From Salisapilia sapeloensis CBS 127946 (Eukaryota; Protista; Oomycota), in contig JAADVB010000045.1 in NCBI GenBank assembly GCA_023334545.1, forward strand, positions 32,173-96,172: a DNA stretch of 64,000 bases, written 5' to 3'. The position numbers and the translations under genes were made by a program. A model generated the notes under the pieces. It was not told the origin of the DNA. It made no database searches and worked only from the letters and a program-made list of their open reading frames with translations. Below are positions 163 to 13,275 of the stretch, piece by piece. Positions within the stretch are counted from its first letter, which is position 1, and each line of letters begins with the position of its first letter.

Positions 163-1083
163 ATGGTTATTAAACGCAATCGGAAGCGCATTCAGGACGC
201 ACTCTCCAAGTGTGGACTGGATGATGCTTTGCAATCCATTGCAAAGTCATCCTCAGTCACGCGCTTCCTTGGATTAGACATTAATACCAATAGCACCGGC
301 TTTGCTGTTCTGAATGACCAAGGTGCGCATGCCATTGCATATTACTCCTCTTAAACTCTTTATAATAGCAGCATCGCACCACTGCATTAAAATGTAGGTA
401 AACTGCTGCAATGGGGCCATGTTGACACGAAGAAAATTCCAAGTGAAGACGTCTTAGCTGCGTCGAATACCATCCAGCAAGAGCTCGTCGATACGCTCCA
501 GCCAAACGCCCAGTCCAAGTCATGGCTAGTGGGCATTGAGGACTTCATGAGGCAGTACACTGCTGGCAAGTTCCAAACGCGTGGTCTATTCCACTTGGCT
601 CAGATCAACGGTATCGTAGGATTCGCTTGCTGGCAGCGTTTCGGTCGTAAACCAGTGCACACCCATCCAACGGCAGCGCGCTCTGCCCTTGGCATTTCCA
701 ATGGCGGCGTCGTGAAAGAGCAAGTGTACGACCTCGTAGCTCGGCAGGAACCAGAAGCTGTAGTCTCCCTCCCACGTACCAAAGCCGGGCGCTTAACCGA
801 CACGGCGTTCGACATGACAGACGCATACGTGATCGCAGCCTACACTCGCTTCCTACATCTGCAGCAGGGTCTCGTAGATAGTCCAGAGCTAGTCGAATCT
901 TTCCATACTACCTACTTCCAAATGAGTCAAGAGACCAAACTTCGATCGAATAAACCATCCGCTGAAGCACAGCAGCTACGTAGCATGACACCTACCGAAC
1001 GAAAACAAGAGCTCTATCGACTATACTGCAGCGGCGTCGATGAATGGATGAAGAATAAGCTAAAGCAAGACTTGGGGTTGTAA
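163..1083 (+). CDS. RuvC/RNase H-fold Holliday junction resolvase-like nuclease, 2 exons (intron 323-397)
   Basis: A GT..TAG intron at 323-397 joins ORFs 163..354 and 529..1083 in frame. RuvC-type acidic motifs are present: FLGLDINTNSTGFAVL, LVGIEDF, PTAARSALG, FDMTDAYVIA. An upstream exon cannot be excluded. Confidence 0.75.
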
Positions 1084-1130
1084 CTGTGAAACTAAACGGT
1101 ATCATGTTGTTGTTGTGACTATTCTAGAGC

Positions 1131-4100
1131 TTAGTGGAACTCGTGGACGTCCGTCCATGCCTTCTCCTCCCGGTTCTCGCGCTCATAATAATCAAAGAGG
1201 CTGTCAGCCTCGAGACCAAGCAACGGCTGGTGCTTGTGGCGCTCCATCGAGTCGACAAAGAGCTTGACGAGACTGATGTTCGTCAGCAGCGGGATGGAAA
1301 AGTCCACGGCTGTTCGTCGGATCATGTAGTTGTTCTTGGTCTGCTTGCTCTCGCTGTTCGGGAGGTTGACGACGAGGTCAATCTCGCCATCCTTGATGTA
1401 TCGCAAGACATTGTTGTCACTGTCATCATCCGACGGGAAGTCGACCTTGGTGGACGGAATGTCGTACTTTTGCAAAAACTCGTGCGTCTTCTCCGTCGTG
1501 TACAAGTTGTATCCGAGCTCGGTCATCTTGAACGCAGCGTGAACAAAGTCATCCGTGAACTTGTCTTGCATCGACAGCAAGATGTTCTTCTTGGGCAATC
1601 GGACATTGGAAGAGATGAGTGCCTTGAGGAAGGCCTCGTGCTCGTTCTTGCCAAAGCACGCGACTTCACCAGTCGACGCCATCTCAACACCCAACAGCGG
1701 GTCGGCACCACCCAATCGGGTGTAACTGAACATGGGCGACTTGATACCAACAAAGCCTTCCGGACGCTTCGGACCGTACAGTTCCGGCAAGTTGTCCTGC
1801 TCCGTCGGCTCTCCGACCATGACCTTGGTGGCAGCGTTGATAAAGTCCGATCCAGTCGTCTTGGACGAGAACGGGAACGATCGAGACGCACGGAGGTTGC
1901 ACTCAATGACACTGACGTCCGCTCCCTTGGCCAAGAACTGCGCATTGAACGGACCAGAGATGTTCAGAGCCGAAGCGATCTTCTCGGCGCACTTGCGGAC
2001 TTCGTTCTGGTAGAACGAACTGGCCTGCACAGGCGGGAGGATCATGGTCGCGTCACCAGAGTGGACACCAGCGTTCTCAATGTGCTCCGAGATGGCAGCA
2101 GCAATAACCTTGCCGTCCTTGGCAACAGCATCAAGCTCCAACTCCTTAGCACCTTCCACGAACTTGGTGATCACGACCGGGTGCTCCTTGGACACTTCCG
2201 CCGCTTCGCCAAGCACACGCTCCAAATCCTCGTGGTTGTGCGCAACGTTCATGGCAGCACCAGACAGCACGTAGGACGGACGGACGAGGCACGGGTAGCC
2301 AACGCGGTCGGCAAAGTCCCGCGCCTCCTGCATGCTCGTGAGCTCCTTCCACTCCGGCTGACGGACGCCAGCCTTGTCCATAAGCTGCGAGAACTTGTAT
2401 CGGTCTTCCGCACTGTCAATCATCGTAGGGTGCGTGCCGAGGACGTGGACGCCAGATTTGTGCAGCGGAAGAGCGAGGTTGTTCGGGATTTGACCACCGA
2501 CACTGACGACGACACCCTGCGGCTGCTCGACGTCGTTGACATCCATCACACGCTCCTTGGACAGCTCTTCAAAGTAGAGCTGGTCGCACTCGTCATAGTC
2601 CGTACTGACCGTCTCGGGGTTGTAGTTGAGCATCACCGATCGGTAGCCAAGCTTTCGAAGCGTACGGATGCAGCTCACAGCACACCAGTCGAACTCGACA
2701 CTCGATCCGATACGGTACGCACCGCTACCCAAGACCATGACACCATCGTTCTTCTCCTGCGCCTGGACATCGTTCTCCGCACCATTGTACGTCATGTAAA
2801 GGTAGTTGGTCTGAGCTGGGTACTCAGCCGCGAGCGTATCGATCTGCTTGACACTCGGGATGATACCCACCTCCTTTCGCTTCGCTCGCACATCATCGTC
2901 TGAGCATCCGAGCATACGCGAGAGCTGACGGTCCGAGAAACCGACCTTCTTGGCTTCCATCAGCTCTTCGCGACTCACTTCCTGAATGCTCTTCCCCGTG
3001 AGGTTGACATCCAAGTCAGCAATACCCTGGAGACGACTCAACCACCACGTATCGATCTTGGTGATATCATGCACCTCGTCGATCGTCAGCATACCTTCCT
3101 TGAGCGCCTGTGCGATCTGGTAAATCCGACGGTCCGTCGGACGGCTCAAAGCGCTCTTGAGCTCGTCCTTGGTCATACGGTCAAAGCGCGGCTCGAAGCC
3201 TTCGACGGCAGGGTCGACCATACGCATGGCCTTCTGGATACCTTCCTCGAAGTTTCTCGAGATAGCCATGACTTCCCCGACACTCTTCATGGCAGATCCG
3301 ATCTCCGTGCTGACGTTCTCGAACTTGGCGAGATCCCAGCGAGGGATCTTGGTCACACAGTAGTCGAGACTCGGCTCAAAGCACGCCGTGGTGCTCTTCG
3401 TGACAGAGTTCTTGAGCTCCGGAAGCGTGATACCAAGGGCAAGTTTCGCAGCAACGAATGCGAGGGGGTAGCCCGTCGCCTTGGACGCCAAGGCACTCGA
3501 ACGAGAGAGACGAGCGTTCACTTCGATGATACAGTACTCTTCCGAGTGCGGGTTCAGAGCGTACTGGATGTTACACTCACCAACGATACCCAAGTGTCGA
3601 ACGACCTTGAGCGCCGTCTCTCGCAGCATGTGGTACTCTCGGTTCGACAGCGTCTGGGATGGCGCAATCACGATCGAGTCACCCGTGTGAATACCAAGCG
3701 GATCAAAGTTCTCCATGTTGCACACCGTCAGACAGTTGTCGGCACTGTCTCGCACGACTTCGTACTCGACTTCCTTCCATCCCTTCATACTTCGCTCCAC
3801 AAGGATCTGAGGACTACCGGCAAACGCCTTCTTCGCCATTGATCGCAGCTCGGCTTCATCGTCGCATAGACCAGAGCCAAGACCTCCGAGAGCAAAGGCC
3901 GATCGGATCATGACAGGGAAACCAATCTCGTGGGCAGCAGTCACAGCATCGTCGACAGAGTTCACGGCGATACCCTTGGCAATACGTTCGTTGATCTCCT
4001 TGAGCTTCTCGTTAAACGAATCTCGGTCTTCCGTCGCTTCAATCACAGGGATCTGCGTACCAATGACTTCGACGCCGTACTTCTCCAAGACACCGTTCTT

Positions 4101-5669
4101 CGCGAGTTCGACACCACAGTTCAAAGCTGTCTGACCACCCATACTGATCAAGATACCATCCGGACGCTCACGCTTAATCACTTGCTCCACAAAGTCTGCG
4201 TTCACTGGTAAGTAGTACACGTTACTCGCCTGTGCTTCACTCGACTTGTCAATGTTCGTCTGGACGGAAGCGATGTTCGGGTTAATCAGAATTGTCTCAA
4301 TCGCTTCTTCCTTGAGCGCCTTGATCGCTTGCGAACCAGAGTAGTCGAACTCACCAGCTTGACCAATGGATAGACCTCCAGATCCGAGAACCAAGACCTT
4401 TTTCACTTGCGGACGAACGACAGGTGGACGCTGGACTAAGCTCGAGATCGGACCCTTCTCCTTTCGACGCACGGCGTCGAGGAAAACATCGAAGAGGAAC
4501 TCCGTGTCCGTCGGTCCGCCAGAGTGCTCCGGATGGAACTGCGCCGTGAAGAACGGCTTGCTCTTGTGGATAATGCCTTCGTTCGTACCGTCGTTACCGT
4601 TGACAAAGAGCTCTTCCCACTCACTCGGCAATGTCTTGCCGTCGAGAGCATACCCGTGGTTCTGAGCAGTGATGTAGCTCTGACCGGTCTTGAGGTTGTT
4701 CACAGGCTGGTTCTGACCTCGGTTACCGAACGGAAGCTTGTACGTCTGCGCACCGGCCGCACGACCGAGCAATTGGTTACCAAAGCAAATACCAAAGATC
4801 GGCTTGACACCATCGCCTTCGACACTGAGCGCCTTCTTCAGCTGCTCCGTCGTCTCCGTGAGCACAGCCGGATCTCCCGGACCGTTACTGATGAACAGAC
4901 CGTCGTACCAGTCGGCTTCCGACGCAATGTCGTGGTTCCACGGCACGAGCTTGACCTCGGCTCCGCGCGACACGAGGGATCGGATAATATTGTATTTGAT
5001 ACCACAGTCGACTGCAAGGATCTTGAGCGGATTGCCAGCGCCAAACGTACGCACTTCCTTCGTGGACACGAGGGCAGACAGGTTGGTCGCGTTCGGGTCG
5101 ATAAAGTCCGGCGTGTCACTACCTTCAACGACGATTCGGCCGCTCATGGCGCCCTTGGCACGGATCTTTTTCGTAATAGCACGCGTGTCGATGCCAGCAA
5201 TACCAGGGATACCTTCCCGAGCGAGCCAGTCGCTTAGGGAAGACGCAGCGTTCCAATGACTATGATGAGAAGAGTAATCTTGGACGATCATACCAGCGGC
5301 ATGGATCCGGTCGGACTCGATGAACTTGTTCAGACCGAACTCATCGATGGCAGTCGTGTCCGGGACACCGTAGTTTCCGATCATGGGGAAGGTCATGTTC
5401 AAGATCTGACCTTTAAAGGAAGCATCCGTGAGAGCTTCCGGGTAGCCGACCATGCCGGTCGTGAAGACGACTTCACCAGCCATGGACTTGGGGGCACCGA
5501 ACGAGACACCTTCAAAGCGAGAGCCGTCCTCGAACTCGAGGAAAGCTGGCGTCTGGAACTTGGGGGCATTTCGACGATCGACTTTCTCCCGAGCAGAGCC
5601 GAGGAGACGGCTACCACTGGACTTGTAAAGTGGTGTGCGTTTGCGAGCGGCGTTGGATAATCGAAGCAT
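1131..5669 (-). CDS. Mitochondrial glutamine-dependent carbamoyl-phosphate synthase (fused small+large subunits, CPS I/III-like)
   Basis: 1512 aa intronless ORF. Basic N-terminal presequence; GATase with GICFGNQ and FHPE; two ATP-grasp halves (GSGGLSIGQAGEFDYSGSQA, GSGAYRIGSSVEFDW); C-terminal MGS-like domain resembling metazoan CPS1 (DLVVNLPN...NYMIRRTAVDFSIPLLTN). Confidence 0.97.
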   Translation of the reverse strand: MLRLSNAARKRTPLYKSSGSRLLGSAREKVDRRNAPKFQTPAFLEFEDGSRFEGVSFGAPKSMAGEVVFTTGMVGYPEALTDASFKGQILNMTFPMIGNYGVPDTTAIDEFGLNKFIESDRIHAAGMIVQDYSSHHSHWNAASSLSDWLAREGIPGIAGIDTRAITKKIRAKGAMSGRIVVEGSDTPDFIDPNATNLSALVSTKEVRTFGAGNPLKILAVDCGIKYNIIRSLVSRGAEVKLVPWNHDIASEADWYDGLFISNGPGDPAVLTETTEQLKKALSVEGDGVKPIFGICFGNQLLGRAAGAQTYKLPFGNRGQNQPVNNLKTGQSYITAQNHGYALDGKTLPSEWEELFVNGNDGTNEGIIHKSKPFFTAQFHPEHSGGPTDTEFLFDVFLDAVRRKEKGPISSLVQRPPVVRPQVKKVLVLGSGGLSIGQAGEFDYSGSQAIKALKEEAIETILINPNIASVQTNIDKSSEAQASNVYYLPVNADFVEQVIKRERPDGILISMGGQTALNCGVELAKNGVLEKYGVEVIGTQIPVIEATEDRDSFNEKLKEINERIAKGIAVNSVDDAVTAAHEIGFPVMIRSAFALGGLGSGLCDDEAELRSMAKKAFAGSPQILVERSMKGWKEVEYEVVRDSADNCLTVCNMENFDPLGIHTGDSIVIAPSQTLSNREYHMLRETALKVVRHLGIVGECNIQYALNPHSEEYCIIEVNARLSRSSALASKATGYPLAFVAAKLALGITLPELKNSVTKSTTACFEPSLDYCVTKIPRWDLAKFENVSTEIGSAMKSVGEVMAISRNFEEGIQKAMRMVDPAVEGFEPRFDRMTKDELKSALSRPTDRRIYQIAQALKEGMLTIDEVHDITKIDTWWLSRLQGIADLDVNLTGKSIQEVSREELMEAKKVGFSDRQLSRMLGCSDDDVRAKRKEVGIIPSVKQIDTLAAEYPAQTNYLYMTYNGAENDVQAQEKNDGVMVLGSGAYRIGSSVEFDWCAVSCIRTLRKLGYRSVMLNYNPETVSTDYDECDQLYFEELSKERVMDVNDVEQPQGVVVSVGGQIPNNLALPLHKSGVHVLGTHPTMIDSAEDRYKFSQLMDKAGVRQPEWKELTSMQEARDFADRVGYPCLVRPSYVLSGAAMNVAHNHEDLERVLGEAAEVSKEHPVVITKFVEGAKELELDAVAKDGKVIAAAISEHIENAGVHSGDATMILPPVQASSFYQNEVRKCAEKIASALNISGPFNAQFLAKGADVSVIECNLRASRSFPFSSKTTGSDFINAATKVMVGEPTEQDNLPELYGPKRPEGFVGIKSPMFSYTRLGGADPLLGVEMASTGEVACFGKNEHEAFLKALISSNVRLPKKNILLSMQDKFTDDFVHAAFKMTELGYNLYTTEKTHEFLQKYDIPSTKVDFPSDDDSDNNVLRYIKDGEIDLVVNLPNSESKQTKNNYMIRRTAVDFSIPLLTNISLVKLFVDSMERHKHQPLLGLEADSLFDYYERENREEKAWTDVHEFH

Positions 5670-5727
5670 CGTGGATTAAATGTTAAACAGAAGGTGAGGC
5701 GTGCCAGGAGGCAGCTCGAGATGGCCG

Positions 5728-5743
5728 CAAATTCAGAAGTGCC
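5728..5743 (-). promoter_or_regulatory. Oomycete-type Inr+FPR core promoter of the CPS gene
   Basis: Minus strand reads GGCACTTCTGAATTTG, close to the YCAYTYYNNAWTTY consensus, about 60-70 nt upstream of the ATG. Confidence 0.55.
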
Positions 5744-6019
5744 GGGAAGAAGGGAGGCGGATCTCAAGTCGGAGCCACTGGTGAGGGGCGGATAGGGCTA
5801 CTATGAAACGGTTGAAGATCGCGTTAACATCACATACTTTCTTTTATATTAAATCTTGAACGGATGTATGGCGCAAACAAGTAGTTTGAAACGAGTGGCC
5901 CAAGCAGCTTCGAGGCCGTGGGATCGTTGTCTGGCCTTGCGCTGTTACCGCCAGCAGAACGTTCACCTGGCTCTCCTGATCTGTGTGGCATTAAGGCTGT
6001 TCAGACCATTTCTAGTAGG

Positions 6020-8023
6020 ATGTGGAAAAGAACACTACGGAGTCCGGTGAACGTGTCCAAGCGATGCCTGAGCACGACACCGCAGGCCGTATCCACGCGG
6101 CTCGCGCAGATCATGCAATCCAATGCTGATATCCAGCGCTATCGGGAAGTGTACGGTGTCCCGGGAGTACGGCGTTCCACAGTAATTAAGATTGGCGGTG
6201 ACGTCATTGAGCATGAGCTCGACACACTCGTCGACTCGCTTGTCTTTCTTAAGCATGCTGGTCTCTTCCCGATCCTAGTGCATGGCGCTGGTCCGCAGAT
6301 GAATGCCGAGCTCGAACGTGCCGGCGTAGAGCCGCAGTACGTCCAAGGCAATCGCGTCACGGACATAGAGACGCTTACGATCGCCAAGCGCATCTTCCTC
6401 CAAGCCAATCGCAAGCTCGTCGATGCACTTGCTGCTGTTGGTGCACCTGCTCGACCCATCACGAGCGGTGTCTTTGAAGCCAAATTCCGCGACATGGATA
6501 CCTTTGGGTACGTGGGTGAGATTAATCACATTCACAGCCAATTCGTCGAAGCAGCGCTCGACAGTGACCAGATCCCAGTCCTCTCATGTCTTGGTGAAAC
6601 TGCGTCCGGCCAGACGCTCAACATCAACGCTGATGTCGCGGCGAGGGAGCTTGCATTGAGCATGCAACCGGACAAGACAGTGTTTATCAACTCCAAAGGC
6701 GGATGGGTCGAAGACGATGGCACCAAGCTCAAGGAAATTAATATGAAACGAGACTACGCCGAGATGGCATCGAGAGACTACACTGGTCGTCAAGGCACGT
6801 TGCTTAAGCTAAACGAGATCAACGCTTTACTGCAAGGACTGCCATCCACTGCCACAGTCGCCTTGACCTCTGCAAAGGAGCTGTCCAAGGAAATTCTGAG
6901 CAACTGCAGTACCGGAACGATCTGCCGTCGTGGAGAGTCCGCTCCTGTCTCCAACTCCACTACCAAGAAGCGTGTGGGTATCCTCGGCGCTCGAGGCTAC
7001 GTCGGTCGAGAGGTCATCCGCTTAGTCGGTCAGCACCCAGAGCTAGAGCTCGTATGTGCTAGTTCCCGTGCGTTAGTCGGTCATAAAGTGTTGGACGTAG
7101 CCATGGCGCCTCCTGTGAACCCCCACACGAACCAACCTGCAAAGGACGCTTCTCGCCACCCAAAGCTCCACATCTCCGAGGACCTCGAGTTCTGTGAACT
7201 TGGTCTTGACGACCTCCCGACGTCAGAACTAGCTGAATCCGTCGACGTCTGGGTCCTCGCACTTCCCAACGGACATTGCCAGCAGTACGCATCTGTCCTC
7301 GACGGTCTCAAGAAGCAGAACAAGATCGTCGTGGACTTGAGTGCCGACCAGCGCTTCAACGACGACTGGGTGTACGGTCTGCCAGAGACGCCTGGCTGTC
7401 GTGATGCGCTCCACGGCGCCACGCACATCTCCAACCCCGGCTGCTACGCTACTGGCGCTCAGATCGGTCTCTTGCCGTTGCTAGGAGGCAAGCCGGAGGT
7501 GAGTGGCAAGCTCATTGACGAGAGCATCCCGCCCCATATCTTTGGTGTCTCGGGATACAGCGGTGCTGGCACGACTGCATCCAACGCCAATAACTTAAAG
7601 GTGTTGCAGGACAATTTGCTCGCGTACAAGTCAGTCAAGCACGTGCATGAGTACGAGGTGTCGCATCAGCTACAGACGCCTGTGCGCTTCATGCCGCACG
7701 TCGCGCCGTACTTCCAAGGCATCCACTTGACCCTGTCGGCGCAACTAGAAGATTCTTCCATCAAGGCAGCCGACATCCAGGAACTGTACAATGAGTTTTA
7801 TAGAGGCGAGAAACTCGCCAAGGTCGTGGATGGCATGCCCATGGTCAAGGACAATGCGTTCCAACACCACGTGAGCGTCGGTGGTTTCCAAATCGACGAA
7901 ACGACCGGTCGACTCGTCATCGTCTCCACCATCGACAACTTGCTCAAGGGTGCTGCAACCCAAGCCGTGCAGAACGTGAACGTTGCGCTCGGACTAGACG
8001 AATACACTGGTATCGACGCTTAA
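6020..8023 (+). CDS. ARG5,6: Bifunctional acetylglutamate kinase / N-acetyl-gamma-glutamyl-phosphate reductase (fungal-type ARG5,6), mitochondrial
   Basis: Likely start MWKRTLR at 6020, followed by a presequence. NAGK motifs VIKIGG, VHGAGPQ, LNINAD; ArgC motifs GARGYVG, NPGCYATG, GVSGYSGAG, DNLLKGAATQA. Confidence 0.95.
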   Translation: MWKRTLRSPVNVSKRCLSTTPQAVSTRLAQIMQSNADIQRYREVYGVPGVRRSTVIKIGGDVIEHELDTLVDSLVFLKHAGLFPILVHGAGPQMNAELERAGVEPQYVQGNRVTDIETLTIAKRIFLQANRKLVDALAAVGAPARPITSGVFEAKFRDMDTFGYVGEINHIHSQFVEAALDSDQIPVLSCLGETASGQTLNINADVAARELALSMQPDKTVFINSKGGWVEDDGTKLKEINMKRDYAEMASRDYTGRQGTLLKLNEINALLQGLPSTATVALTSAKELSKEILSNCSTGTICRRGESAPVSNSTTKKRVGILGARGYVGREVIRLVGQHPELELVCASSRALVGHKVLDVAMAPPVNPHTNQPAKDASRHPKLHISEDLEFCELGLDDLPTSELAESVDVWVLALPNGHCQQYASVLDGLKKQNKIVVDLSADQRFNDDWVYGLPETPGCRDALHGATHISNPGCYATGAQIGLLPLLGGKPEVSGKLIDESIPPHIFGVSGYSGAGTTASNANNLKVLQDNLLAYKSVKHVHEYEVSHQLQTPVRFMPHVAPYFQGIHLTLSAQLEDSSIKAADIQELYNEFYRGEKLAKVVDGMPMVKDNAFQHHVSVGGFQIDETTGRLVIVSTIDNLLKGAATQAVQNVNVALGLDEYTGIDA

Positions 8024-8099
8024 GAAGTTCAATAAAAATACGTTTGTGGCTCGTTCGTTCTAGCGATAGCCCATGCAAAAATGCGTAATATTTCTTTTC

Positions 8100-8922
8100 T
8101 TAGTATTGCAGGATCGGATCCCCGACCTTGTCGATCATGGACACGGTGCATTTGAGGTCAAAGACTTTGCTTAAGACGACCTTGAAGAGTTTCTGGACAT
8201 TGATCGAGTGAGACGCAGAGGTGAAGATGAGTGGAGCTTTCATCGCTTTCGCAAACTTGCGTGCTTGCTTGGTAATGTCCTCCTGTTCTTTGGCTGAGAA
8301 CTCGGTGAATTGATCGTACTTGGTTCCGATCAAGAACGGAAACGCATTCTATAAGATACGTGAGCATGGTCGGTATAGTCGAGGTAGGACGAGTGTGACC
8401 TTGTTGATCGTCCGAACTTGGCGGTACCATTCCTTAACACTCATGAGCGTCGCCTTCCGCGTGAGGTCGAACATGAAGAGGATGGCGACGGCATCGTTGC
8501 ATACGAGTGGGAGCATGCTGATAAACTCCCGATGACCTGTCTCACGCGATTAGAATCATCTACTAGCGTCGAAAGATGTTAATGGATGCCAACCGCCAAG
8601 ATCCCAAATGCTAAAGGTGATCTCGGTATTCCGCAATGCAATCGTCTTCTCCATAAAATTTACACCTACGTGCCATAAGCCACTATCCTCTGTACAGTCT
8701 ACAATGACACATACCTAGCGTGTGGATGTAGTCTTCATCAAACTTGCCTTCGACGTACTTGACCATGAGACTCGTCTTCCCGACCTGAGCATCCCCAACC
8801 ATCCCGACTTTGACCACGACATTATTCCTCCCGCCTCGACCACTCGTCGCCTCCTTCTTATCCGTCACATCCTTCACCTCCTCTCCACTCGCACTCGCAG
8901 CAGCCTTCTCCTCCATCTCCAC
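8100..8922 (-). CDS. SPG1: Spg1/Tem1-family small GTPase, 4 exons
   Basis: Spliced product reads [64 protein letters not shown], with three introns of about 50 nt. Confidence 0.92.
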
Positions 8923-9151
8923 TCGGAAAATCTCTTTTGCAATTGAAAATTCTTTTTATTTCGCTTCTCAACTTGCAATTTCATCGATTAATCATACAAT
9001 ACCACTTCAACCCGACATGGCAACCATTACTCACAACAAGCACATGCGCCAATCCGTGGGCAGGGGTCTGATATACAAAAAAATAGTCAGCCACAGCCGA
9101 CCATACTCAAATTGAGACATTCTCACATTCGCCTCCACTGACGTAAGGAGC

Positions 9152-12100
9152 ATGCGACTGCACTACGCGCTGCTCGTATCGGCCATCGCGGTACACGCCG
9201 CGGATGCTGCCACGCAATGCGCTTTCAATCTACAGACAAAACTACTGTCGACGTTGCAGGACCCACCGACGGATGTCGTCGTCGAAGGAAGCAGTCAGAG
9301 TCTAGACGTCTTCGTCGGCTCCACATCCTTTGATGGCAGCGTTGGAGACTTGCTAGACCACTACGACGACGCCATTACCGCGTCTACATCTACCAGTGGA
9401 TCTGGCTTGCTCACCAACGACTCCTCTCTGGATGGAGTAGACCTACCGAATATCTCGACGCCAGTGCCCGTCGACGGGAGCTTGGACTTGCTACCAGGCG
9501 AATCAGGTTCCAAGGCCAAAGACAAGGGAAGTGGCAGCAGCACGTCTGCACCCACTACTCTCATCCCTGACTCTGGCAGCTCTGGCAGCTCTGCCAAGTC
9601 GGAAAAGGAAGATAAAGGCGGTAAATCAGACAGTGGCAGCACCAACTCCCCCGCGCCGACCACTACGGCGCCGAGTCCCAGCCCCGACAGCAAAGGCTCG
9701 CTGGACGCTGCCGTCCCATTAGACGATCTAACGAGACGACTGCAAGTAAACGCTGGCAGCTTGGCTGGCCTCGAGAACGTCGCCGGTGTCGATCGCGTCG
9801 GAAGCACCATCGGCTCTGCTTCTGTGAGCGCAGACGTGTTGTCATCTGGAGGTAGTGGCTCTACTTCGGATGGGAACATGGCCTGTGATGAAGGTTTCTA
9901 TGAGAAATGGAATACTCTCGGTATTAAGTGTCTCGGAGAAGACATCGACGTCGAGAAAGCAGTCGATGCAGCCGCTTGTGTAATCTACAGCGGTAACCTC
10001 GGCGTACTCTCCGGTCATTCCTGCGTCTCGATCTGTTCCTTCCCTGGTTGCACCAACGACGGATGGGACTATAGCGTTTCCAACGGCTTTGCTTCTCCCG
10101 TCTATCGTGACTATCAACTCTCGGACTTTATGTCCCCGGACATGACTGCTCGGATGTCGACGCAGAAGCAAGCGCCTACTATCATGTCCAACACGAGCAT
10201 GACGAGCTCTCAACAGTGTTCCTACGACGACGAAGACTCGTTCTCGTCGTGCGACTGCTCCAGTCTTCTCGTCTCTGGCACGGAAGAAGACGCGCAGAGA
10301 GATCGGATCAAGGACTGGGCACAAGGCATCATCCCAGACGACGACACGAGTCTCACAGGCAAGATCCTCGCGCCAGTGTCCAAGAGTCTCGCCGGTGCAG
10401 CCGTCGCCATGAGCGGTATCGCCGTCGTCGCAAGTTCCGTCGTGAGCTCTGCTTCTGCCGCTGCTGGAGCTGCAGGTGCAGGCGCTGGGTCCGTCGGTAT
10501 CTACACGATCGACATCTGTGGCTTTGGCGTCATGATCAATCAATTAGATCTCCAAGGTCGCTCAGCTGTCTTGACCAACTTTGGCGAGTCGCTTGCTCCT
10601 GCGACCTTTATCTTCATGCCGTTCGGTAAGATCCATGACGACGATAAGGACGAGGGTACGAGTGATGCGGATCGAACGACACGCCGACTTATGGACGGGA
10701 GTGAGACGCTACCAGACTCTGGTATCGCCAAGTACGCTCGTATCGCAGGCTTTCGAGAAGACATGCTTTTCGTCGTGACACTCGCAGGTGTCGTCGTGAT
10801 TATGGCAGGTATCCTCGCAGCTTTCTTCGTCGCCTACTTGATTGCTGGCTTCTTCATGTCAAGAGAAACGTTCATGGATAAGTTTTTTGATAAAATGGTT
10901 AGTCTACAAGTACTTGTAGCTATCCTCTCGCAGTACACGATCGGTGTCACGGGAACTTATCAAATCTATCACTCGATCGAATCCAAGGGAGAGGTAGATG
11001 CCAAGTGCATCTTGGCGTTCGCAGCTATCATCTTCCTTGCTCTTGGTATCATGGTCTTTGGTCTCGTGGTCATTAAACGCAATGAAGACAAGATCCAGGA
11101 CGTCGGGCAGCCTTCGCATATCAACAAGTGGATTTGCAAACGCTACGGACCGCTCTATGACGAGTACACGTACGACAATCGATTCTTCTTTGCTTCGAAG
11201 ATGCTCCTAGCTCTTGCGACTGGTGTCATCACAGGCTTTGTCGGCCTTAGCTCGACACTCCAAGTGTCGCTCTTACTCGGTTGCCAAGTCATCTTCTTCT
11301 TCTACCTCGAATACAGGTCTCCGCATCACTCCAAGTTCATCCAACGCGCCACGAGCTTTGTTAGTGTCATGAAGATCACCGTCCTTATCCTCACTTTCTT
11401 CCTCATCAGTGCTGCGACGGCGGATGGACTCCCGAGTGACGTCCAGAACGGTATCTCTTTAGCCATCGTCGGTCTTAACGTCTTCGTCCTCCTCCTCATG
11501 CTCCTACGCTCCGTCTACAACTTCTGGAACAAGTTCCAGATGCAGCGTAAGGGACAGGAGTATGAGAATGAGGCACAGAGCGCTCGAGATTACTTTAAGG
11601 ATGAAACGCCGCAGAAGGAGACTTCACAGACAAATCAAGGTTCCTCCTACTTTGATACATCGGAGCCGGCGCCGGAAGGAGAAGACATTCGTCTACGCTC
11701 CGGCACGCATCTTAATGACTCGAATAACTATGCCAACTACCAGCCACAGGCGAGCGGTGCTGGACAGACCGGGTCGTCTAGATACCTCGCGGATGATATT
11801 GGACAGCAAGGATATCGTCAGAATCCGTACGACGTCGAGACATCCATGGAAGACGACGTGATGAATCCGTACCAACGAGCTGATAGCAATGATGCTTTCC
11901 GTCCGAATAACGCGACGCAGCCGCTGAATCCGTACAACTCGAGTCAGTCGATGGATACGTACCAGCCGAGTCGACCGATGAAACCGAAGGACTTGAGCCA
12001 ATCCACGAGTGGCTACGAGTCTTCTCGACCGAATCCGTACACTGCACATGGATCAATGGATACCAGTCAAGGGTATCAGCAGACGGAAAGATATGGTGCT

Positions 12101-12202
12101 CCACCGGCACCGACAGAAACGCACATGCCACCGAACAATCGTCAGGCACGTGACAGTGTGAACGAGTACAACCAGCGTCGAGATGACGTGATTGAGCTTT
12201 AA
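9152..12202 (+). CDS. Secreted-ectodomain multi-pass membrane protein, TRP/PKD2(FLC)-like
   Basis: Signal peptide, Ser/Thr/Gly-rich stalk, Cys-rich domain, about 8-9 hydrophobic helices, the motif YGPLYDEY..RFFF typical of fungal FLC/TRP-like domains, and a Q/N/Y-rich tail. Confidence 0.7.
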   Translation: MRLHYALLVSAIAVHAADAATQCAFNLQTKLLSTLQDPPTDVVVEGSSQSLDVFVGSTSFDGSVGDLLDHYDDAITASTSTSGSGLLTNDSSLDGVDLPNISTPVPVDGSLDLLPGESGSKAKDKGSGSSTSAPTTLIPDSGSSGSSAKSEKEDKGGKSDSGSTNSPAPTTTAPSPSPDSKGSLDAAVPLDDLTRRLQVNAGSLAGLENVAGVDRVGSTIGSASVSADVLSSGGSGSTSDGNMACDEGFYEKWNTLGIKCLGEDIDVEKAVDAAACVIYSGNLGVLSGHSCVSICSFPGCTNDGWDYSVSNGFASPVYRDYQLSDFMSPDMTARMSTQKQAPTIMSNTSMTSSQQCSYDDEDSFSSCDCSSLLVSGTEEDAQRDRIKDWAQGIIPDDDTSLTGKILAPVSKSLAGAAVAMSGIAVVASSVVSSASAAAGAAGAGAGSVGIYTIDICGFGVMINQLDLQGRSAVLTNFGESLAPATFIFMPFGKIHDDDKDEGTSDADRTTRRLMDGSETLPDSGIAKYARIAGFREDMLFVVTLAGVVVIMAGILAAFFVAYLIAGFFMSRETFMDKFFDKMVSLQVLVAILSQYTIGVTGTYQIYHSIESKGEVDAKCILAFAAIIFLALGIMVFGLVVIKRNEDKIQDVGQPSHINKWICKRYGPLYDEYTYDNRFFFASKMLLALATGVITGFVGLSSTLQVSLLLGCQVIFFFYLEYRSPHHSKFIQRATSFVSVMKITVLILTFFLISAATADGLPSDVQNGISLAIVGLNVFVLLLMLLRSVYNFWNKFQMQRKGQEYENEAQSARDYFKDETPQKETSQTNQGSSYFDTSEPAPEGEDIRLRSGTHLNDSNNYANYQPQASGAGQTGSSRYLADDIGQQGYRQNPYDVETSMEDDVMNPYQRADSNDAFRPNNATQPLNPYNSSQSMDTYQPSRPMKPKDLSQSTSGYESSRPNPYTAHGSMDTSQGYQQTERYGAPPAPTETHMPPNNRQARDSVNEYNQRRDDVIEL
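11819..12063 (+). repeat. Four degenerate NPY repeats (two followed by SMDT) in the cytoplasmic tail
   Basis: QNPYDVET, MNPYQRAD, LNPYNSSQSMDT, PNPYTAHGSMDT; the DNA core aatccgtac recurs four times. Confidence 0.75.
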
Positions 12203-12247
12203 GCTTTTTCGACACTGCCATCGACCGAGGTGGATTTCTTTGACAAT

Positions 12248-12709
12248 TTATTTTCTTTTGCTTTCGGAACTAGACCTTCGGGCTAGTGCATTTGAACATA
12301 CTAGTGGATCTTTTGTAAGCAATATACCACTTACTATTGGAAGCTCTTTGTTTGTATTTGATATCCTCTTGGAGATGAGCAAGTAGCTGCTCGATGCAGC
12401 TTGATAGAGAATTTGGATAAGAATCTGATTCTGATGATCAAGTCCTTGTAGAAGTGCAGATGCAATGGAATAGTGATGGAAGGAAGCTTCCAACCACGAA
12501 AGTGGATGTCTCTAGACAGCAATACGAGGTACGTGTATCCACGAAAGGCAGTCGAAGAATCCATGCAAGATCCATCGGCAGATGTGGAGGAAGGCTGCAT
12601 ACTTTACCCCAATAAAACTATTGTACCAACGACGTAAATGGTACCATTGGGAGTGTACCACCCGGATAATCAGACGAAAATCCATTTGATCGAGCTCGAT
12701 CCAAGTCAT
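12248..12709 (-). CDS. Possible small spliced gene, unknown function
   Basis: ATG at 12709; plausible introns join MTWIELDQMDF.. to LPPHLPMDLAWILRLPF and possibly to the 12248..12493 frame. Several alternative models fit. Confidence 0.3.
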
Positions 12710-12738
12710 TCGATCGAGTCGCTACGTACGTCTAGACG

Positions 12739-13275
12739 ATGGCGACGTCCGAGTTGACTCAAGGACTACTCGACTTGCAAGAACGACCGGATGACATCGG
12801 ACGCCAAGTGACAAAACTGTATGCGTTAGACGAAGAACTACAAGCCGCCCATCAGAAAGCCAAACAAGACGATGAGCATGGCGAACAGGTCGTCGCACTG
12901 TACAGCGACTTTTTAACCGAGCGACAGAAACTCATCGATTTACTCCAAGCCGAAGGTATCGCTGTGCCATGGCAATTACGCATGCGTGTCGATGTCTTGG
13001 AGCGAACTGTACGCTACTTTATTCCTACCATCCTCATGTATGTGAAGCTCATTCCTACGTAGATCCGAGAGAGAAAGAAAGCTGGGGAGCCGATTAAGCA
13101 AGTGCAAAAGCAACCGACAAAAGCTTCTCTGGAAGAAGAAGACAGGGCAGCGTTAGGACCTGTGTCGAGAAAAGAGCGCGTGGTCGTCACAAGTCTCATC
13201 AGTGCCATCGTCGTCGCCATTCTCGCCGTCCTCTACGTCATGTACTTTGGCTATACTCCTCCTTCCAACACATAA
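12739..13275 (+). CDS. Helical/coiled-coil protein with a C-terminal tail anchor, 2 exons (intron 13009-13062)
   Basis: A 54 nt GT..TAG intron joins the ORF to IRERKKAG...VVVTSLISAIVVAILAVLYVMYFGYTPPSNT*. Confidence 0.65.

What the first reader, a model, noticed from the sequence alone, without database searches (positions are those of the whole stretch)
163..1083. Spliced nuclear gene for a phage-like RuvC Holliday-junction resolvase
Seen: once the 75-nt intron is removed, a roughly 281-aa protein carries all four RuvC acidic residues (GLD, IED, DMTD) and an extra C-terminal helical extension. Known: eukaryotic RuvC-fold resolvases described so far are mostly organellar (fungal Cce1/Ydc2, plant and algal MOC1) or poxviral. 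Inference: the middle motifs (IEDF..G..T..L..NGIV..G..P..P..AR..LG..K..V..TKAG..DM.DA.VIA) resemble tailed-phage RuvC-like proteins as I remember them, more than MOC1 or Cce1. This may be a domesticated viral or bacterial resolvase serving the mitochondrial genome (large inverted repeats are reported in Pythium and Saprolegniales mtDNA) or the nucleus. The N-terminus is basic (KRNRKR).
Basis: partly seen in the sequence, partly recalled or inferred. Interest (0 to 1): 0.75.

Follow-up and report, generated by a model that had tools for sequence, protein, structure and literature searches.

The report
Phage-type DNA-junction cutter in an oomycete
This is a real, spliced and expressed nuclear gene for an enzyme built like the bacterial and phage scissors (RuvC) that cut crossed DNA strands apart. 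It belongs to an unstudied family found in many protists whose nearest relatives are in large marine phages, so it is a candidate for the unidentified junction cutter of non-fungal mitochondria.

Summary
Exon 1 (163-322), a 75-nt GT..AG intron (323-397) and exon 2 (398-1083) give a 281-aa protein. Contigs from three public runs skip exactly those 75 nt. The intron sits at the same codon and phase in Pythium oligandrum and Saprolegnia diclina.

The protein has a RuvC resolvase fold. The ortholog model has pLDDT 93, and its top structural hits are phage bIL67 RuvC, MOC1 and bacterial RuvC (Z 17-18.5). YqgF and IS110 transposase score much lower. The four acidic residues (D39, E101, D192, D195) are near-invariant across the family, and a RuvC-like homodimer is predicted.

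The "phage-like" reading holds. Profile-profile E is 1e-38 to a clade of ~185-aa proteins from uncultured tailed phages, against 5e-4 to canonical RuvC. MOC1 and Ydc2 give no sequence hit.

The family is not confined to oomycetes. It occurs in all sampled oomycetes, brown algae, Phaeothamnion, Picozoa, a cyanidialean red alga and Naegleria/Willaertia. It has no Pfam model and I found no paper on it. UniProt auto-names some members "Ydc2 catalytic domain-containing", which I could not reproduce.

Mitochondrial action is inferred, not shown. This same stretch was noted twice by the scan.

The parts
163..322 (+). Exon 1. It encodes residues 1-53 plus the first base of Gly54: the basic N-terminus (KRNRKR, residues 4-9), an N-terminal helical segment, and strands beta1-beta2 with the first catalytic Asp (D39, nt 277-279, motif FLGLDINTNSTG).
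   Evidence: Exon 1 alone aligns to orthologs at 45-59% identity. It hits phrog_159 positions 80-107 (E 0.085) and the Cas9 RuvC-I motif (E 0.016), both weakly.
323..397 (+). Intron of 75 nt, GT..AG, phase 1, inside a Gly codon.
   Evidence: Contigs of X1, X2 and X4 skip exactly these 75 nt. An intron lies at the same codon and phase in Pythium oligandrum (65 nt) and Saprolegnia diclina (43 nt). In the ~95%-identical relative X5, most listed differences and both small deletions lie inside the intron.
398..1083 (+). Exon 2. It encodes residues 54-281 plus the TAA stop: the rest of the RuvC core and the C-terminal helices.
   Evidence: Orthologs have E 2e-40. The AF2 model of this part has pLDDT 93.4 and pTM 0.86. 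Its top structural matches are ZmMOC1 Z 13.2, phage bIL67 RuvC 12.3 and E. coli RuvC 11.5.
538..543 (+). E101-D102 (motif VGIEDF). E101 is the second catalytic acid.
   Evidence: Glu is invariant in 137/137 family rows.
577..642 (+). Long helix carrying the LFHLAQINGIV motif (exon-2 residues 60-81). It is the predicted homodimer interface, equivalent to RuvC helix alpha-B.
   Evidence: Helix 60-81 is seen in the model. L and N are nearly invariant (131/139 and 134/139). In the ortholog dimer prediction the interface residues are 127-142 of P0008, which is the same helix.
811..822 (+). D192-M-T-D195 (motif FDMTDAYVIA). These are the third and fourth catalytic acids, at the start of the last core helix.
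   Evidence: D 126/128 and D 125/127 in the family. The motif aligns with the D..DA motif of E. coli and Pseudomonas RuvC in the profile hits.
877..1080 (+). C-terminal extension of about 68 aa made of three helices. It is absent from phage and bacterial RuvC but conserved among oomycete orthologs. Its function is unknown.
   Evidence: Helices at exon-2 residues 162-182, 188-195 and 198-224 have pLDDT 90-97. There is no meaningful structural match (best Z 5.2). Conserved columns are seen in A1. Phage relatives end about 10-20 aa after the D..D motif.

Best explanation
The gene encodes an active, metal-dependent, homodimeric RuvC-type structure-selective endonuclease.

Proposed mechanism: two subunits pair through the long alpha-B helix (LAQxNGIV motif). 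Each active site (D39, E101, D192, D195) holds the divalent metal ions. The dimer binds a four-way (Holliday or cruciform) DNA junction and nicks two strands of like polarity, releasing two ligatable duplexes.

It is a long-resident nuclear gene of an oomycete on the Pythium/Phytophthora side of the group. It belongs to an uncharacterised eukaryotic family whose closest non-eukaryotic relatives are RuvC-like resolvases of large uncultured tailed phages, not cellular RuvC, MOC1 or Cce1/Ydc2.

Its most likely place of work is the mitochondrion, where it would resolve recombination and replication intermediates of mtDNA.

Shown here: gene structure, splicing, expression, fold, conserved catalytic tetrad, phage kinship and eukaryotic distribution.

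Inferred: junction cleavage (my confidence about 0.8), the dimer (in silico only) and mitochondrial localisation (about 0.5-0.55). The overall confidence of 0.6 is for the whole statement, including the organellar part.
For: Gene and transcript
- Spliced contigs are found in three runs from two samples.
- The genome holds a single copy.
- The intron position and phase are shared with Pythium and Saprolegnia.
- The resolvase lies next to the carbamoyl-phosphate synthase (CPS) and ARG5,6 genes in Pythium oligandrum as it does here.

Fold
- AF2 of ortholog P0008: pLDDT 93.1, pTM 0.90.
- VIA-align: 4ktw phage RuvC Z 18.5 (rmsd 2.2, 153 aa), ZmMOC1 17.3, Pseudomonas RuvC 17.0.
- The window's own exon-2 model gives the same families.
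- The BFVD and ESM Atlas nearest neighbours are Caudovirales/Uroviricota RuvC-like proteins.

Catalytic residues
- The four acids are conserved in at least 96% of rows, and N124, R148 and K160 likewise.

Dimer
- ipSAE is 0.63 against a best control of 0.00.
- That mark was reached by 21 of 30 proteins solved as one-chain pairs and by 0 of 23 solved as single chains. On eukaryotes it was 17 of 29, but only 1 of 7 without an older solved relative, so the pass may come from memory of RuvC dimers.
- The runs agree in at least 90% of contacts, and partner pLDDT is at least 82.
- The interface is symmetric, on helices 81-86 and 127-142.

Phage kinship
- phrog_159 is hit by 67 of 150 members.
- hhalign gives E 1.2e-38 to the phage clade against 4.9e-4 to canonical RuvC.
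- The short members lie on phage contigs: one of 158 kb with a terminase and a T4-type portal, and 73 IMG/VR contigs. Only one hit was found in 185,579 bacterial and archaeal species genomes.
- In the tree rooted on bacterial RuvC, phage plus eukaryote rows form a 100* clade, and the eukaryote rows sit on one side of a branch (SH-aLRT 86).

Organelle reading
- Eukaryotic members carry N-terminal extensions (median 43 aa, against 4 aa in phage). These are Arg/Ser/Ala-rich and acid-poor in Picozoa, Willaertia, Cyanidiococcus and Discosporangium.
- The genome also has the usual nuclear junction nucleases: 5 XPG_I and 2 ERCC4 loci.
- Picozoa, oomycetes and Naegleria lack plastids (my own background knowledge, not tested here), which would make the mitochondrion the only DNA-holding organelle common to all carriers.
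Against: - No biochemical or localisation data exist for any member.
- The window protein has only 38 residues before D39, and in the ortholog model residues 16-38 are packed helices. That leaves about 8-15 free residues, which is short for a cleavable presequence. The segment also contains D12, D20 and D21.
- KRNRKR also looks like a nuclear localisation signal.
- No targeting predictor was available.
- The assembly holds no cox1, so the mtDNA and any inverted repeat could not be examined.
- Structure does not rank phage RuvC above MOC1 with any margin.
- Most rows labelled 'eukaryote' in the trees are unnamed metagenome or transcriptome proteins. Only about 20 are named, and two more were checked by their eukaryotic gene neighbours.
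- The joined 281-aa protein itself was not searched or folded.
Confidence: 0.6

Rival explanations
1. It has the same enzyme activity but works in the nucleus. It would be a RuvC-type resolvase imported through the basic KRNRKR patch, acting on chromosomal recombination or replication intermediates alongside GEN1 and MUS81.
For: The N-terminus is short, basic and partly structured. The (L)RRNxxR motif is conserved among oomycete orthologs, which suggests a functional element rather than a disposable presequence.
Against: Non-oomycete members carry long N-terminal extensions that look like organellar presequences. The genome already has XPG- and ERCC4-family nucleases. All other known eukaryotic cellular RuvC-fold resolvases (Cce1/Ydc2, MOC1) are organellar; this last point is background knowledge and PMC6981420.
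Confidence: 0.2
2. It is simply a divergent member of the fungal Cce1/Ydc2 mitochondrial resolvase family, as UniProt's automatic name for several orthologs says. On this reading the phage likeness is only shared RuvC-superfamily ancestry.
For: UniRef gives the name 'Mitochondrial resolvase Ydc2 catalytic domain-containing protein' to Globisporangium, Saprolegnia, Aphanomyces, Peronospora, Phytophthora and Naegleria members. The Foldseek hit to 1kcf has E 2.8e-5 and is the longest alignment, 256 columns including the N-terminal helices.
Against: Pfam PF09159 (Ydc2-catalyt) matched none of 150 members at E <= 0.01. It also matched none of 15 proteins scanned at E <= 10, which include the UniRef-named orthologs. 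The family profile finds no Ydc2 chain in the PDB at E <= 10. The VIA Z to Ydc2 is 12.9 at rmsd 5.6, well below phage RuvC, MOC1 and RuvC. ESM Atlas feature scores are 0.81-0.85 for Ydc2 clusters and 0.91 for phage clusters.
Confidence: 0.12
3. The RuvC fold has been recruited for a non-resolvase role. One example is a mitochondrial transcription or nucleoid factor like human TEFM. Another is an RNA-processing nuclease like YqgF/RuvX.
For: The C-terminal domain of TEFM is a clear structural match (Z 14.8, 170 aa aligned). The extra N- and C-terminal helices have no assigned role.
Against: From my own background knowledge, not checked here, TEFM is a pseudo-nuclease that has lost the catalytic acids. 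In this family all four are at least 96% conserved across phage and eukaryote members. YqgF/RuvX score far lower (Z 10 for the ortholog model, about 5 for the window model).
Confidence: 0.07
4. It is not a resident host gene at all. It would be a recent viral or bacterial insertion, a contaminant or a mobile element.
For: The nearest non-eukaryotic relatives are phage proteins.
Against: It has a spliceosomal intron at a position shared across oomycetes. Its synteny with CPS and ARG5,6 is conserved. It is single-copy. Orthologs exist in every sampled oomycete genus. Identity to phage proteins is only about 25-30%.
Confidence: 0.01

Closest known systems
RuvC-like Holliday junction resolvases of tailed phages (PHROG phrog_159; solved example Lactococcus phage bIL67 RuvC, PDB 4ktw)
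   Same: It shares the RNase H-like RuvC core and the D-E-D-D tetrad. The motif order is the same: GLDxST..TG, IE(D/E), LAxFNGIV, P...AR..G, K..V, R.GN....D.ADAYVIA. This is the best structural match (Z 18.5). Profile-profile E to the nearest phage clade is 1.2e-38.
   Different: The phage proteins are about 176-195 aa with no extensions. They lie in phage replication/recombination modules beside a fused Mre11-Rad50 nuclease gene. The window protein has a ~38-aa basic N-terminal segment, a ~68-aa C-terminal helical extension and an intron, and it is a conserved nuclear gene. No hit was found in cultured-phage GenBank records by tblastn, so the close phage clade is known only from metagenomes.
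Bacterial RuvC (Pfam PF02075; PDB 1hjr, 6lw3, 4ld0)
   Same: It shares the fold (Z 15.4-17.0), the catalytic tetrad D-E-D-D as in E. coli RuvC, and a predicted dimer through helix alpha-B.
   Different: The sequence relation is only marginal. PF02075 does not hit the window exons. Only 15 of 150 family members hit it at E <= 0.01 (best 1.3e-5); the five oomycete, red-alga hits shown individually score 12-15 bits against the 22.2-bit cut-off. hhalign gives E 4.9e-4 and probability 32%. A long branch separates the two in the tree.
MOC1, the chloroplast Holliday junction resolvase of green plants (PDB 6is8, 6jrf, 6kvo)
   Same: It is a nuclear-encoded organellar RuvC-fold resolvase, and the structural similarity is as good as to phage RuvC (Z 17.3 for the ortholog model; 13.2, the top hit, for the window exon-2 model).
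   Different: There is no sequence-profile hit at E <= 10. The PDB entry titles name an H253A mutant of ZmMOC1 alongside D115N and K229A; whether His253 occupies the position that is Asp in this family (126/128 rows) was not checked here. The carriers here are mostly plastid-free organisms.
Cce1/Ydc2, the fungal mitochondrial cruciform-cutting endonuclease (Pfam PF09159; PDB 1kcf)
   Same: It is a nuclear-encoded RuvC-fold resolvase with extra helical elements. It probably shares the cellular role (mtDNA junction resolution), and some database entries carry its name.
   Different: PF09159 is not matched. The structural Z is lower (12.9, rmsd 5.6). No profile hit was found in the PDB.
Poxvirus/NCLDV A22 resolvase (Pfam PF04848; PDB 6p7a, 5e6f)
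   Same: It has the RuvC fold and is a viral resolvase (Z 13.3-14.3). After RuvC, these are the next-nearest named clusters in the ESM Atlas (0.86).
   Different: There is no sequence hit, identity in structural alignments is 8-9%, and the scores are lower than for phage RuvC.

Membership tests
RuvC superfamily of junction resolvases (RNase H-like fold) | RNase H-like alpha/beta core with RuvC topology | tested here: met
   AF2 models have pLDDT 93. The top matches are RuvC-type resolvases at Z 15-18.5 and rmsd 2.2-2.7 over about 150 aa. The window's own exon-2 part gives Z 11-13.
RuvC superfamily of junction resolvases (RNase H-like fold) | Four catalytic acidic residues (D, E, D/H, D) at the ends of beta1 and beta4 and on the last helix | tested here: met
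   D39, E101, D192 and D195 are present in the window protein. The family columns are conserved at 96-100%. They align to the RuvC motifs in the PDB profile hits.
RuvC superfamily of junction resolvases (RNase H-like fold) | Homodimer that places two active sites across the junction | tested here: inconclusive
   Prediction only, and on ortholog P0008: ipSAE 0.63 against a best control of 0.00, with a symmetric alpha-B interface. The tool warns that such a pass may reflect memory of solved RuvC dimers.
RuvC superfamily of junction resolvases (RNase H-like fold) | Metal-dependent symmetric cleavage of four-way junctions | not testable with these tools
   This needs a biochemical assay.
Pfam RuvC (PF02075), canonical cellular RuvC | Score above the curated cut-off (22.2 bits) | tested here: not met
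   The window exons give no hit at E <= 10. Orthologs score 12-15 bits. 15 of 150 family members match at E <= 0.01.
PHROG phrog_159, phage RuvC-like Holliday junction resolvase | Significant match to the family profile, colinear over the core | tested here: met
   Exon 1 has E 0.085 (profile positions 80-107) and exon 2 has E 0.0059 (profile positions 163-258); both are weak but colinear. Full-length orthologs score 2e-6 to 8e-4. 67 of 150 members match, best 1.8e-17. hhalign to the phage clade gives E 1.2e-38. The joined window protein itself was not scanned.
Cce1/Ydc2 (Pfam PF09159 Ydc2-catalyt) | Match to PF09159 above its cut-off (23 bits) | tested here: not met
   No match for either window exon. 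No match in 150 members at E <= 0.01. No match in 15 proteins scanned at E <= 10, including those that UniRef names after Ydc2. No match in the six-frame search of the genome, though that control rang nowhere.
MOC1 (green-plant chloroplast resolvase) | Sequence relationship to solved MOC1 chains closer than to other RuvC-fold proteins | tested here: not met
   Profiles A1 and A3 find no MOC1 chain in the PDB at E <= 10, while bacterial RuvC appears at 6e-4. Structural Z is tied with phage and bacterial RuvC. No MOC1 sequences were available for a tree.
   YqgF/RuvX score Z 10.2-10.7 and IS621/IS110 score 11.6, against 17-18.5 for the resolvases. With the window model YqgF scores 5.4 and RuvX 4.7.

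The most novel reading that the evidence does not exclude
This family is the ancestral phage-derived mitochondrial Holliday-junction resolvase of eukaryotes. It would have been acquired early, near the origin of mitochondria, together with the phage-type RNA polymerase, Twinkle helicase and DNA polymerase. It would be retained in many protist lineages (stramenopiles, red algae, Heterolobosea, Picozoa). Fungal Cce1/Ydc2, and possibly MOC1 and the pseudo-nuclease domain of TEFM, would be fast-evolving offshoots of it.
Probability: 0.2. Interest if true: 0.8.

Novelty: new variant of a known kind. Interest (0 to 1): 0.58.

Why it matters
Outside fungi (Cce1/Ydc2), and in some green plants (MOC1), the enzyme that resolves Holliday junctions in mitochondria is unknown. 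A review of plant mtDNA repair says plainly that no mitochondrial resolvase has been identified there (PMC6981420).

This gene gives a concrete, testable candidate for oomycetes, which include major crop and fish pathogens, and for brown and red algae, Naegleria and other protists. The family has no Pfam model, and my searches of the open literature found no paper on it.

Its closest relatives are resolvases of large marine tailed phages. If it proves to be mitochondrial, it would add a recombination enzyme to the known set of phage-derived mitochondrial DNA machinery.

It is also a compact (~280 aa), well-folded junction-specific nuclease that could be characterised easily.

Tried and rejected
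Searches that gave nothing useful:
- Pfam and NCBIfam scans of the two exons gave no family beyond a weak Cas9 RuvC-I motif hit.
- A single-sequence search of exon 2 and an oomycete-profile search against PDB sequences found nothing.
- tblastn of exon 2 and of phage-clade member P0131 against 50,697 GenBank phage records found no match. The close phage clade is therefore known only from metagenomes.
It was redone with the single protein P0152.
- PF09159 in the own genome found nothing, and its control rang nowhere, so that result is uninformative.
- COX1 in the own genome found nothing, so the mtDNA is not in the assembly.
- The word search with the non-oomycete alignment A6 added only two Naegleria species.
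- Pfam scans of genes next to the phage homologs found only the fused Mre11-Rad50 nuclease.
- Five literature searches found no description of this family.

Readings considered and rejected:
- A contaminant, recent insertion or mobile element, because of the intron, synteny and single copy.
- A TEFM-like pseudo-nuclease, because the catalytic tetrad is intact.
- YqgF or a transposase, because of the lower structural scores.

Exons were used by reference, and full-length orthologs were used for whole-protein questions.

Full report
**Gene model**

The ATG at 163 opens a frame that runs into a stop at 352-354 if read straight through. Removing 323-397 (75 nt, GT..AG) joins base 322 to bases 398-399 as a Gly codon and continues to TAA at 1081-1083. 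That gives 53 + 1 + 227 = 281 aa.

Following the operators' rule, I handled the two exons only by reference (window:163-321:+ and window:400-1080:+). I never searched or folded the joined protein.

**Expression and splicing**

One search for sequencing runs found four small (~15 Mb) assemblies from one study and two samples that hold 77-83% of the sampled words. I laid three of them on the window. Each has a contig with zero mismatches that skips exactly 75 nt with GT..AG ends.

The genome (22.4 Mb, 1365 contigs) holds one copy, and that copy has the intron. The joined form therefore comes from RNA.

A fourth run (X5), from a ~95%-identical relative, keeps the intron at low depth. Most of its listed differences and both small deletions lie inside the intron.

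The transcript contigs run on into the convergent carbamoyl-phosphate synthase (CPS) gene. Its stop codon lies only 47 nt beyond the resolvase stop, so the two 3' ends must overlap.

**Long residency in the nucleus**

- In Pythium oligandrum the ortholog lies in the same order (resolvase, then convergent CPS, then ARG5,6). It has a 65-nt intron in the same Gly codon and the same phase.
- Saprolegnia diclina has a 43-nt intron at that same codon and phase.
- The intron is therefore shared by a saprolegnialean and by the Pythium side of the group, so it is probably old within oomycetes.
- Orthologs were found in Phytophthora, Peronospora, Bremia, Plasmopara, Nothophytophthora, Pythium, Globisporangium, Lagenidium, Albugo, Saprolegnia and Aphanomyces.
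- The window protein is only 36-44% identical to any of them.
- In trees it sits inside the oomycete clade (SH-aLRT 96). It groups with Pythium, Globisporangium and Phytophthora and lies outside Albugo plus Saprolegniales.

**What the protein is**

Curated sequence libraries say little:
- Pfam and NCBIfam give nothing for the exons.
- PDB sequences give nothing.
- PHROGs gives weak but colinear hits of both exons to phrog_159, 'RuvC-like Holliday junction resolvase' (E 0.085 and 0.0059).
- The five full-length Globisporangium orthologs hit the same family at 2e-6 to 8e-4.

An exhaustive HMM search of 1.84 billion representatives with the oomycete profile found 427 relatives at E <= 1e-3, of which 144 are at E <= 1e-10. 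Of the best 150:
- 67 match phrog_159, down to 1.8e-17.
- 15 match Pfam RuvC weakly.
- None match Ydc2-catalyt.

A profile of 139 members finds Pseudomonas and E. coli RuvC in the PDB (E 6e-4 and 1.7e-3), with the GLD and D..DA motifs aligned. It also finds the RuvC-I motif of Cas9. It finds no MOC1, Ydc2 or poxvirus chain at E <= 10.

**Structure**

The Pythium oligandrum ortholog, modelled with the 139-row alignment, has pLDDT 93.1 and pTM 0.90. Foldseek puts bacterial RuvC, Ydc2, phage bIL67 RuvC, TEFM and MOC1 on top. VIA-align gives these Z scores:

| Structure | Z |
|---|---|
| Phage bIL67 RuvC (rmsd 2.2, 153 aa) | 18.5 |
| ZmMOC1 | 17.3 |
| Bacterial RuvC | 15.4-17.0 |
| TEFM | 14.8 |
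| Fowlpox resolvase | 14.3 |
| Ydc2 | 12.9 |
| IS621 transposase | 11.6 |
| YqgF/RuvX | 10.2-10.7 |

The window's own exon-2 product was modelled alone (pLDDT 93.4). It gives the same families: ZmMOC1 13.2, bIL67 RuvC 12.3, E. coli RuvC 11.5, YqgF 5.4.

The fold is therefore that of a RuvC-type resolvase. Structure alone does not choose between the phage, plant and bacterial branches.

In BFVD and the ESM Atlas the nearest models are Caudovirales/Uroviricota RuvC-like proteins, with TM up to 0.86-0.88 on the target's length. Pox_A22 and Ydc2 clusters come later, at feature scores of 0.81-0.86 against 0.91 for the phage clusters.

**Active site and dimer**

D39, E101, D192 and D195 correspond to family columns that are D 109/113, E 137/137, D 126/128 and D 125/127. 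N124, R148 and K160 are conserved at 96% or more.

A two-copy prediction of the ortholog passes the tool's mark:
- ipSAE is 0.63 and the best control is 0.00.
- The mark was reached by 21 of 30 proteins solved as one-chain pairs and by 0 of 23 solved as single chains.
- On eukaryotes it was reached by 17 of 29, but by only 1 of 7 with no older solved relative.
- The runs agree in at least 90% of contacts, and partner pLDDT is at least 82.
- The interface is symmetric, on the start of helix 81-99 and on helix 127-142. The latter carries the near-invariant LAQxNGIV motif.

From my background knowledge, helix alpha-B also forms the dimer interface in RuvC. The pass may reflect the model's memory of RuvC dimers.

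**Kinship**

The ~176-195-aa members of the family are viral:
- One lies on a 158-kb scaffold next to a primase-like gene, a fused Mre11-Rad50 nuclease gene, a large terminase and an intein-bearing T4-type portal.
- A single member finds relatives on 73 IMG/VR contigs. The four loci I inspected share a conserved gene order, and the one downstream ~1045-aa ORF I scanned is the same fused nuclease.
- Only one hit, on a 4.4-kb MAG contig, was found among 185,579 bacterial and archaeal species genomes.

These phage proteins share the whole motif series with the oomycete proteins. hhalign of the oomycete profile against the phage profile gives probability 100%, E 1.2e-38 and 172 columns. Against a profile of 11 canonical bacterial RuvCs it gives probability 32% and E 4.9e-4.

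In the unrooted 166-row tree, a 99* branch separates the 30 short phage rows from 136 longer rows that contain every named eukaryote.

When the tree is rooted with bacterial RuvC:
- Phage plus eukaryote rows form a 100* clade on a long branch.
- The eukaryote rows sit on one side of a branch (SH-aLRT 86).
- The phage rows form an unresolved base; their monophyly has support of only 5.

The eukaryotic family is thus either sister to, or derived from within, this phage group. The direction is not proven. The outgroup comes from a single bacterial phylum, and the tree method was 'quick'.

**Distribution in eukaryotes**

Named members beyond oomycetes:
- Ectocarpus and Discosporangium (brown algae), Phaeothamnion, and a Picozoa single-cell genome.
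- Cyanidiococcus (a red alga) and Willaertia.
- Naegleria fowleri and N. lovaniensis.

Two unnamed sub-clades lie on 0.5-Mb contigs among exportin, actin, HSP70, HMG-box and Fra10Ac1 genes that are broken up by introns. The Willaertia gene sits beside a tubulin gene.

Most other 'eukaryote' rows are unnamed. I label them eukaryotic only because of where they fall in the tree and because of their extensions.

**Where it acts**

This part is inferred. For the mitochondrion:
- Eukaryotic members have N-terminal extensions (median 43 aa, against 4 aa in phage).
- In Picozoa, Willaertia, Cyanidiococcus and Discosporangium these are Arg/Ser/Ala-rich with few acids, like organellar presequences.
- Several carriers have no plastid (my own background knowledge).
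- The genome has the normal nuclear junction nucleases: five XPG_I and two ERCC4 loci.

Against it:
- The window protein has only 38 residues before D39.
- About 23 of the equivalent residues in the ortholog model are packed helices.
- KRNRKR could be a nuclear localisation signal.

**Comparison with what is known, and novelty**

The protein works like RuvC, Cce1 or MOC1. It fails the membership tests for Pfam RuvC, Ydc2-catalyt and MOC1. It meets the test for the phage family phrog_159.

Some orthologs carry the UniRef name 'Mitochondrial resolvase Ydc2 catalytic domain-containing protein'. I could not reproduce that with PF09159. I suspect it is a machine-predicted name, but that is my conjecture.

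Five literature searches found no description of the family. A review states that no mitochondrial resolvase is known in plants (PMC6981420).

I class this as a new variant of a known kind: a third, phage-related family of nuclear-encoded RuvC-fold resolvases, with its own N- and C-terminal helical additions.

The scan's first stage noted this same stretch twice (s1-282330 and s1-307754).

Noticed in passing
window 1081-1133: The stop codon of the resolvase gene (1081-1083) and the stop codon of the convergent 1512-aa carbamoyl-phosphate synthase gene (starting at 1131, minus strand) are only 47 nt apart. Transcript contigs of X1 and X4 run through both genes, so the two mRNAs must overlap at their 3' ends.
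   Followed up: partly
L077 (Pythium oligandrum SPLM01000108.1) 4149-12965: The micro-synteny BRAP2-like gene, resolvase, CPS (convergent), ARG5,6 is shared with the window for the last three genes. Several database 'fusion' proteins look like gene-model mergers of the resolvase with its upstream neighbour. These are Lagenidium at 806 aa with BRAP2/zf-UBP, P0194 at 606 aa with zf-UBP, and P0200 at 618 aa with small-GTPase domains.
   Followed up: partly
L001 8568-16558; L005, L010, L016, L070 around 6000-11000: The phage relatives sit in a conserved module. An ORF of about 800 aa comes first, then the resolvase, then a ~320-aa primase-like ORF, then a ~1045-aa single-chain fusion of Mre11/SbcD (Metallophos) with Rad50/SbcC. 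In L001 a terminase and a T4-type portal interrupted by an intein follow. Most neighbouring ORFs have no Pfam family.
   Followed up: partly
window 168-529, run X5 (organism B): A ~95%-identical relative shows this gene with the intron retained at depth about 5, while the neighbouring CPS gene has depth about 83. One contig end carries Illumina adapter sequence at position 168. Whether this is unspliced RNA, DNA carry-over or a real 5' end near the ATG was not resolved. All contigs of X1 and X2 also begin at 169, six bases after the ATG.
   Followed up: no
G000 whole assembly: No COX1 match was found anywhere in the 22.4-Mb, 1365-contig assembly, so the mitochondrial genome seems to have been left out of it. 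The assembly is small for an oomycete.
   Followed up: no
alignment A2 members: One eukaryote-type family member carries a SAP domain (E 2.4e-4). The ESM Atlas lists a chlorophyte cluster of SAP-domain proteins, and Ydc2 clusters with SAP, among the more distant neighbours of this family. That is a possible link to Cce1/Ydc2-type architectures.
   Followed up: no
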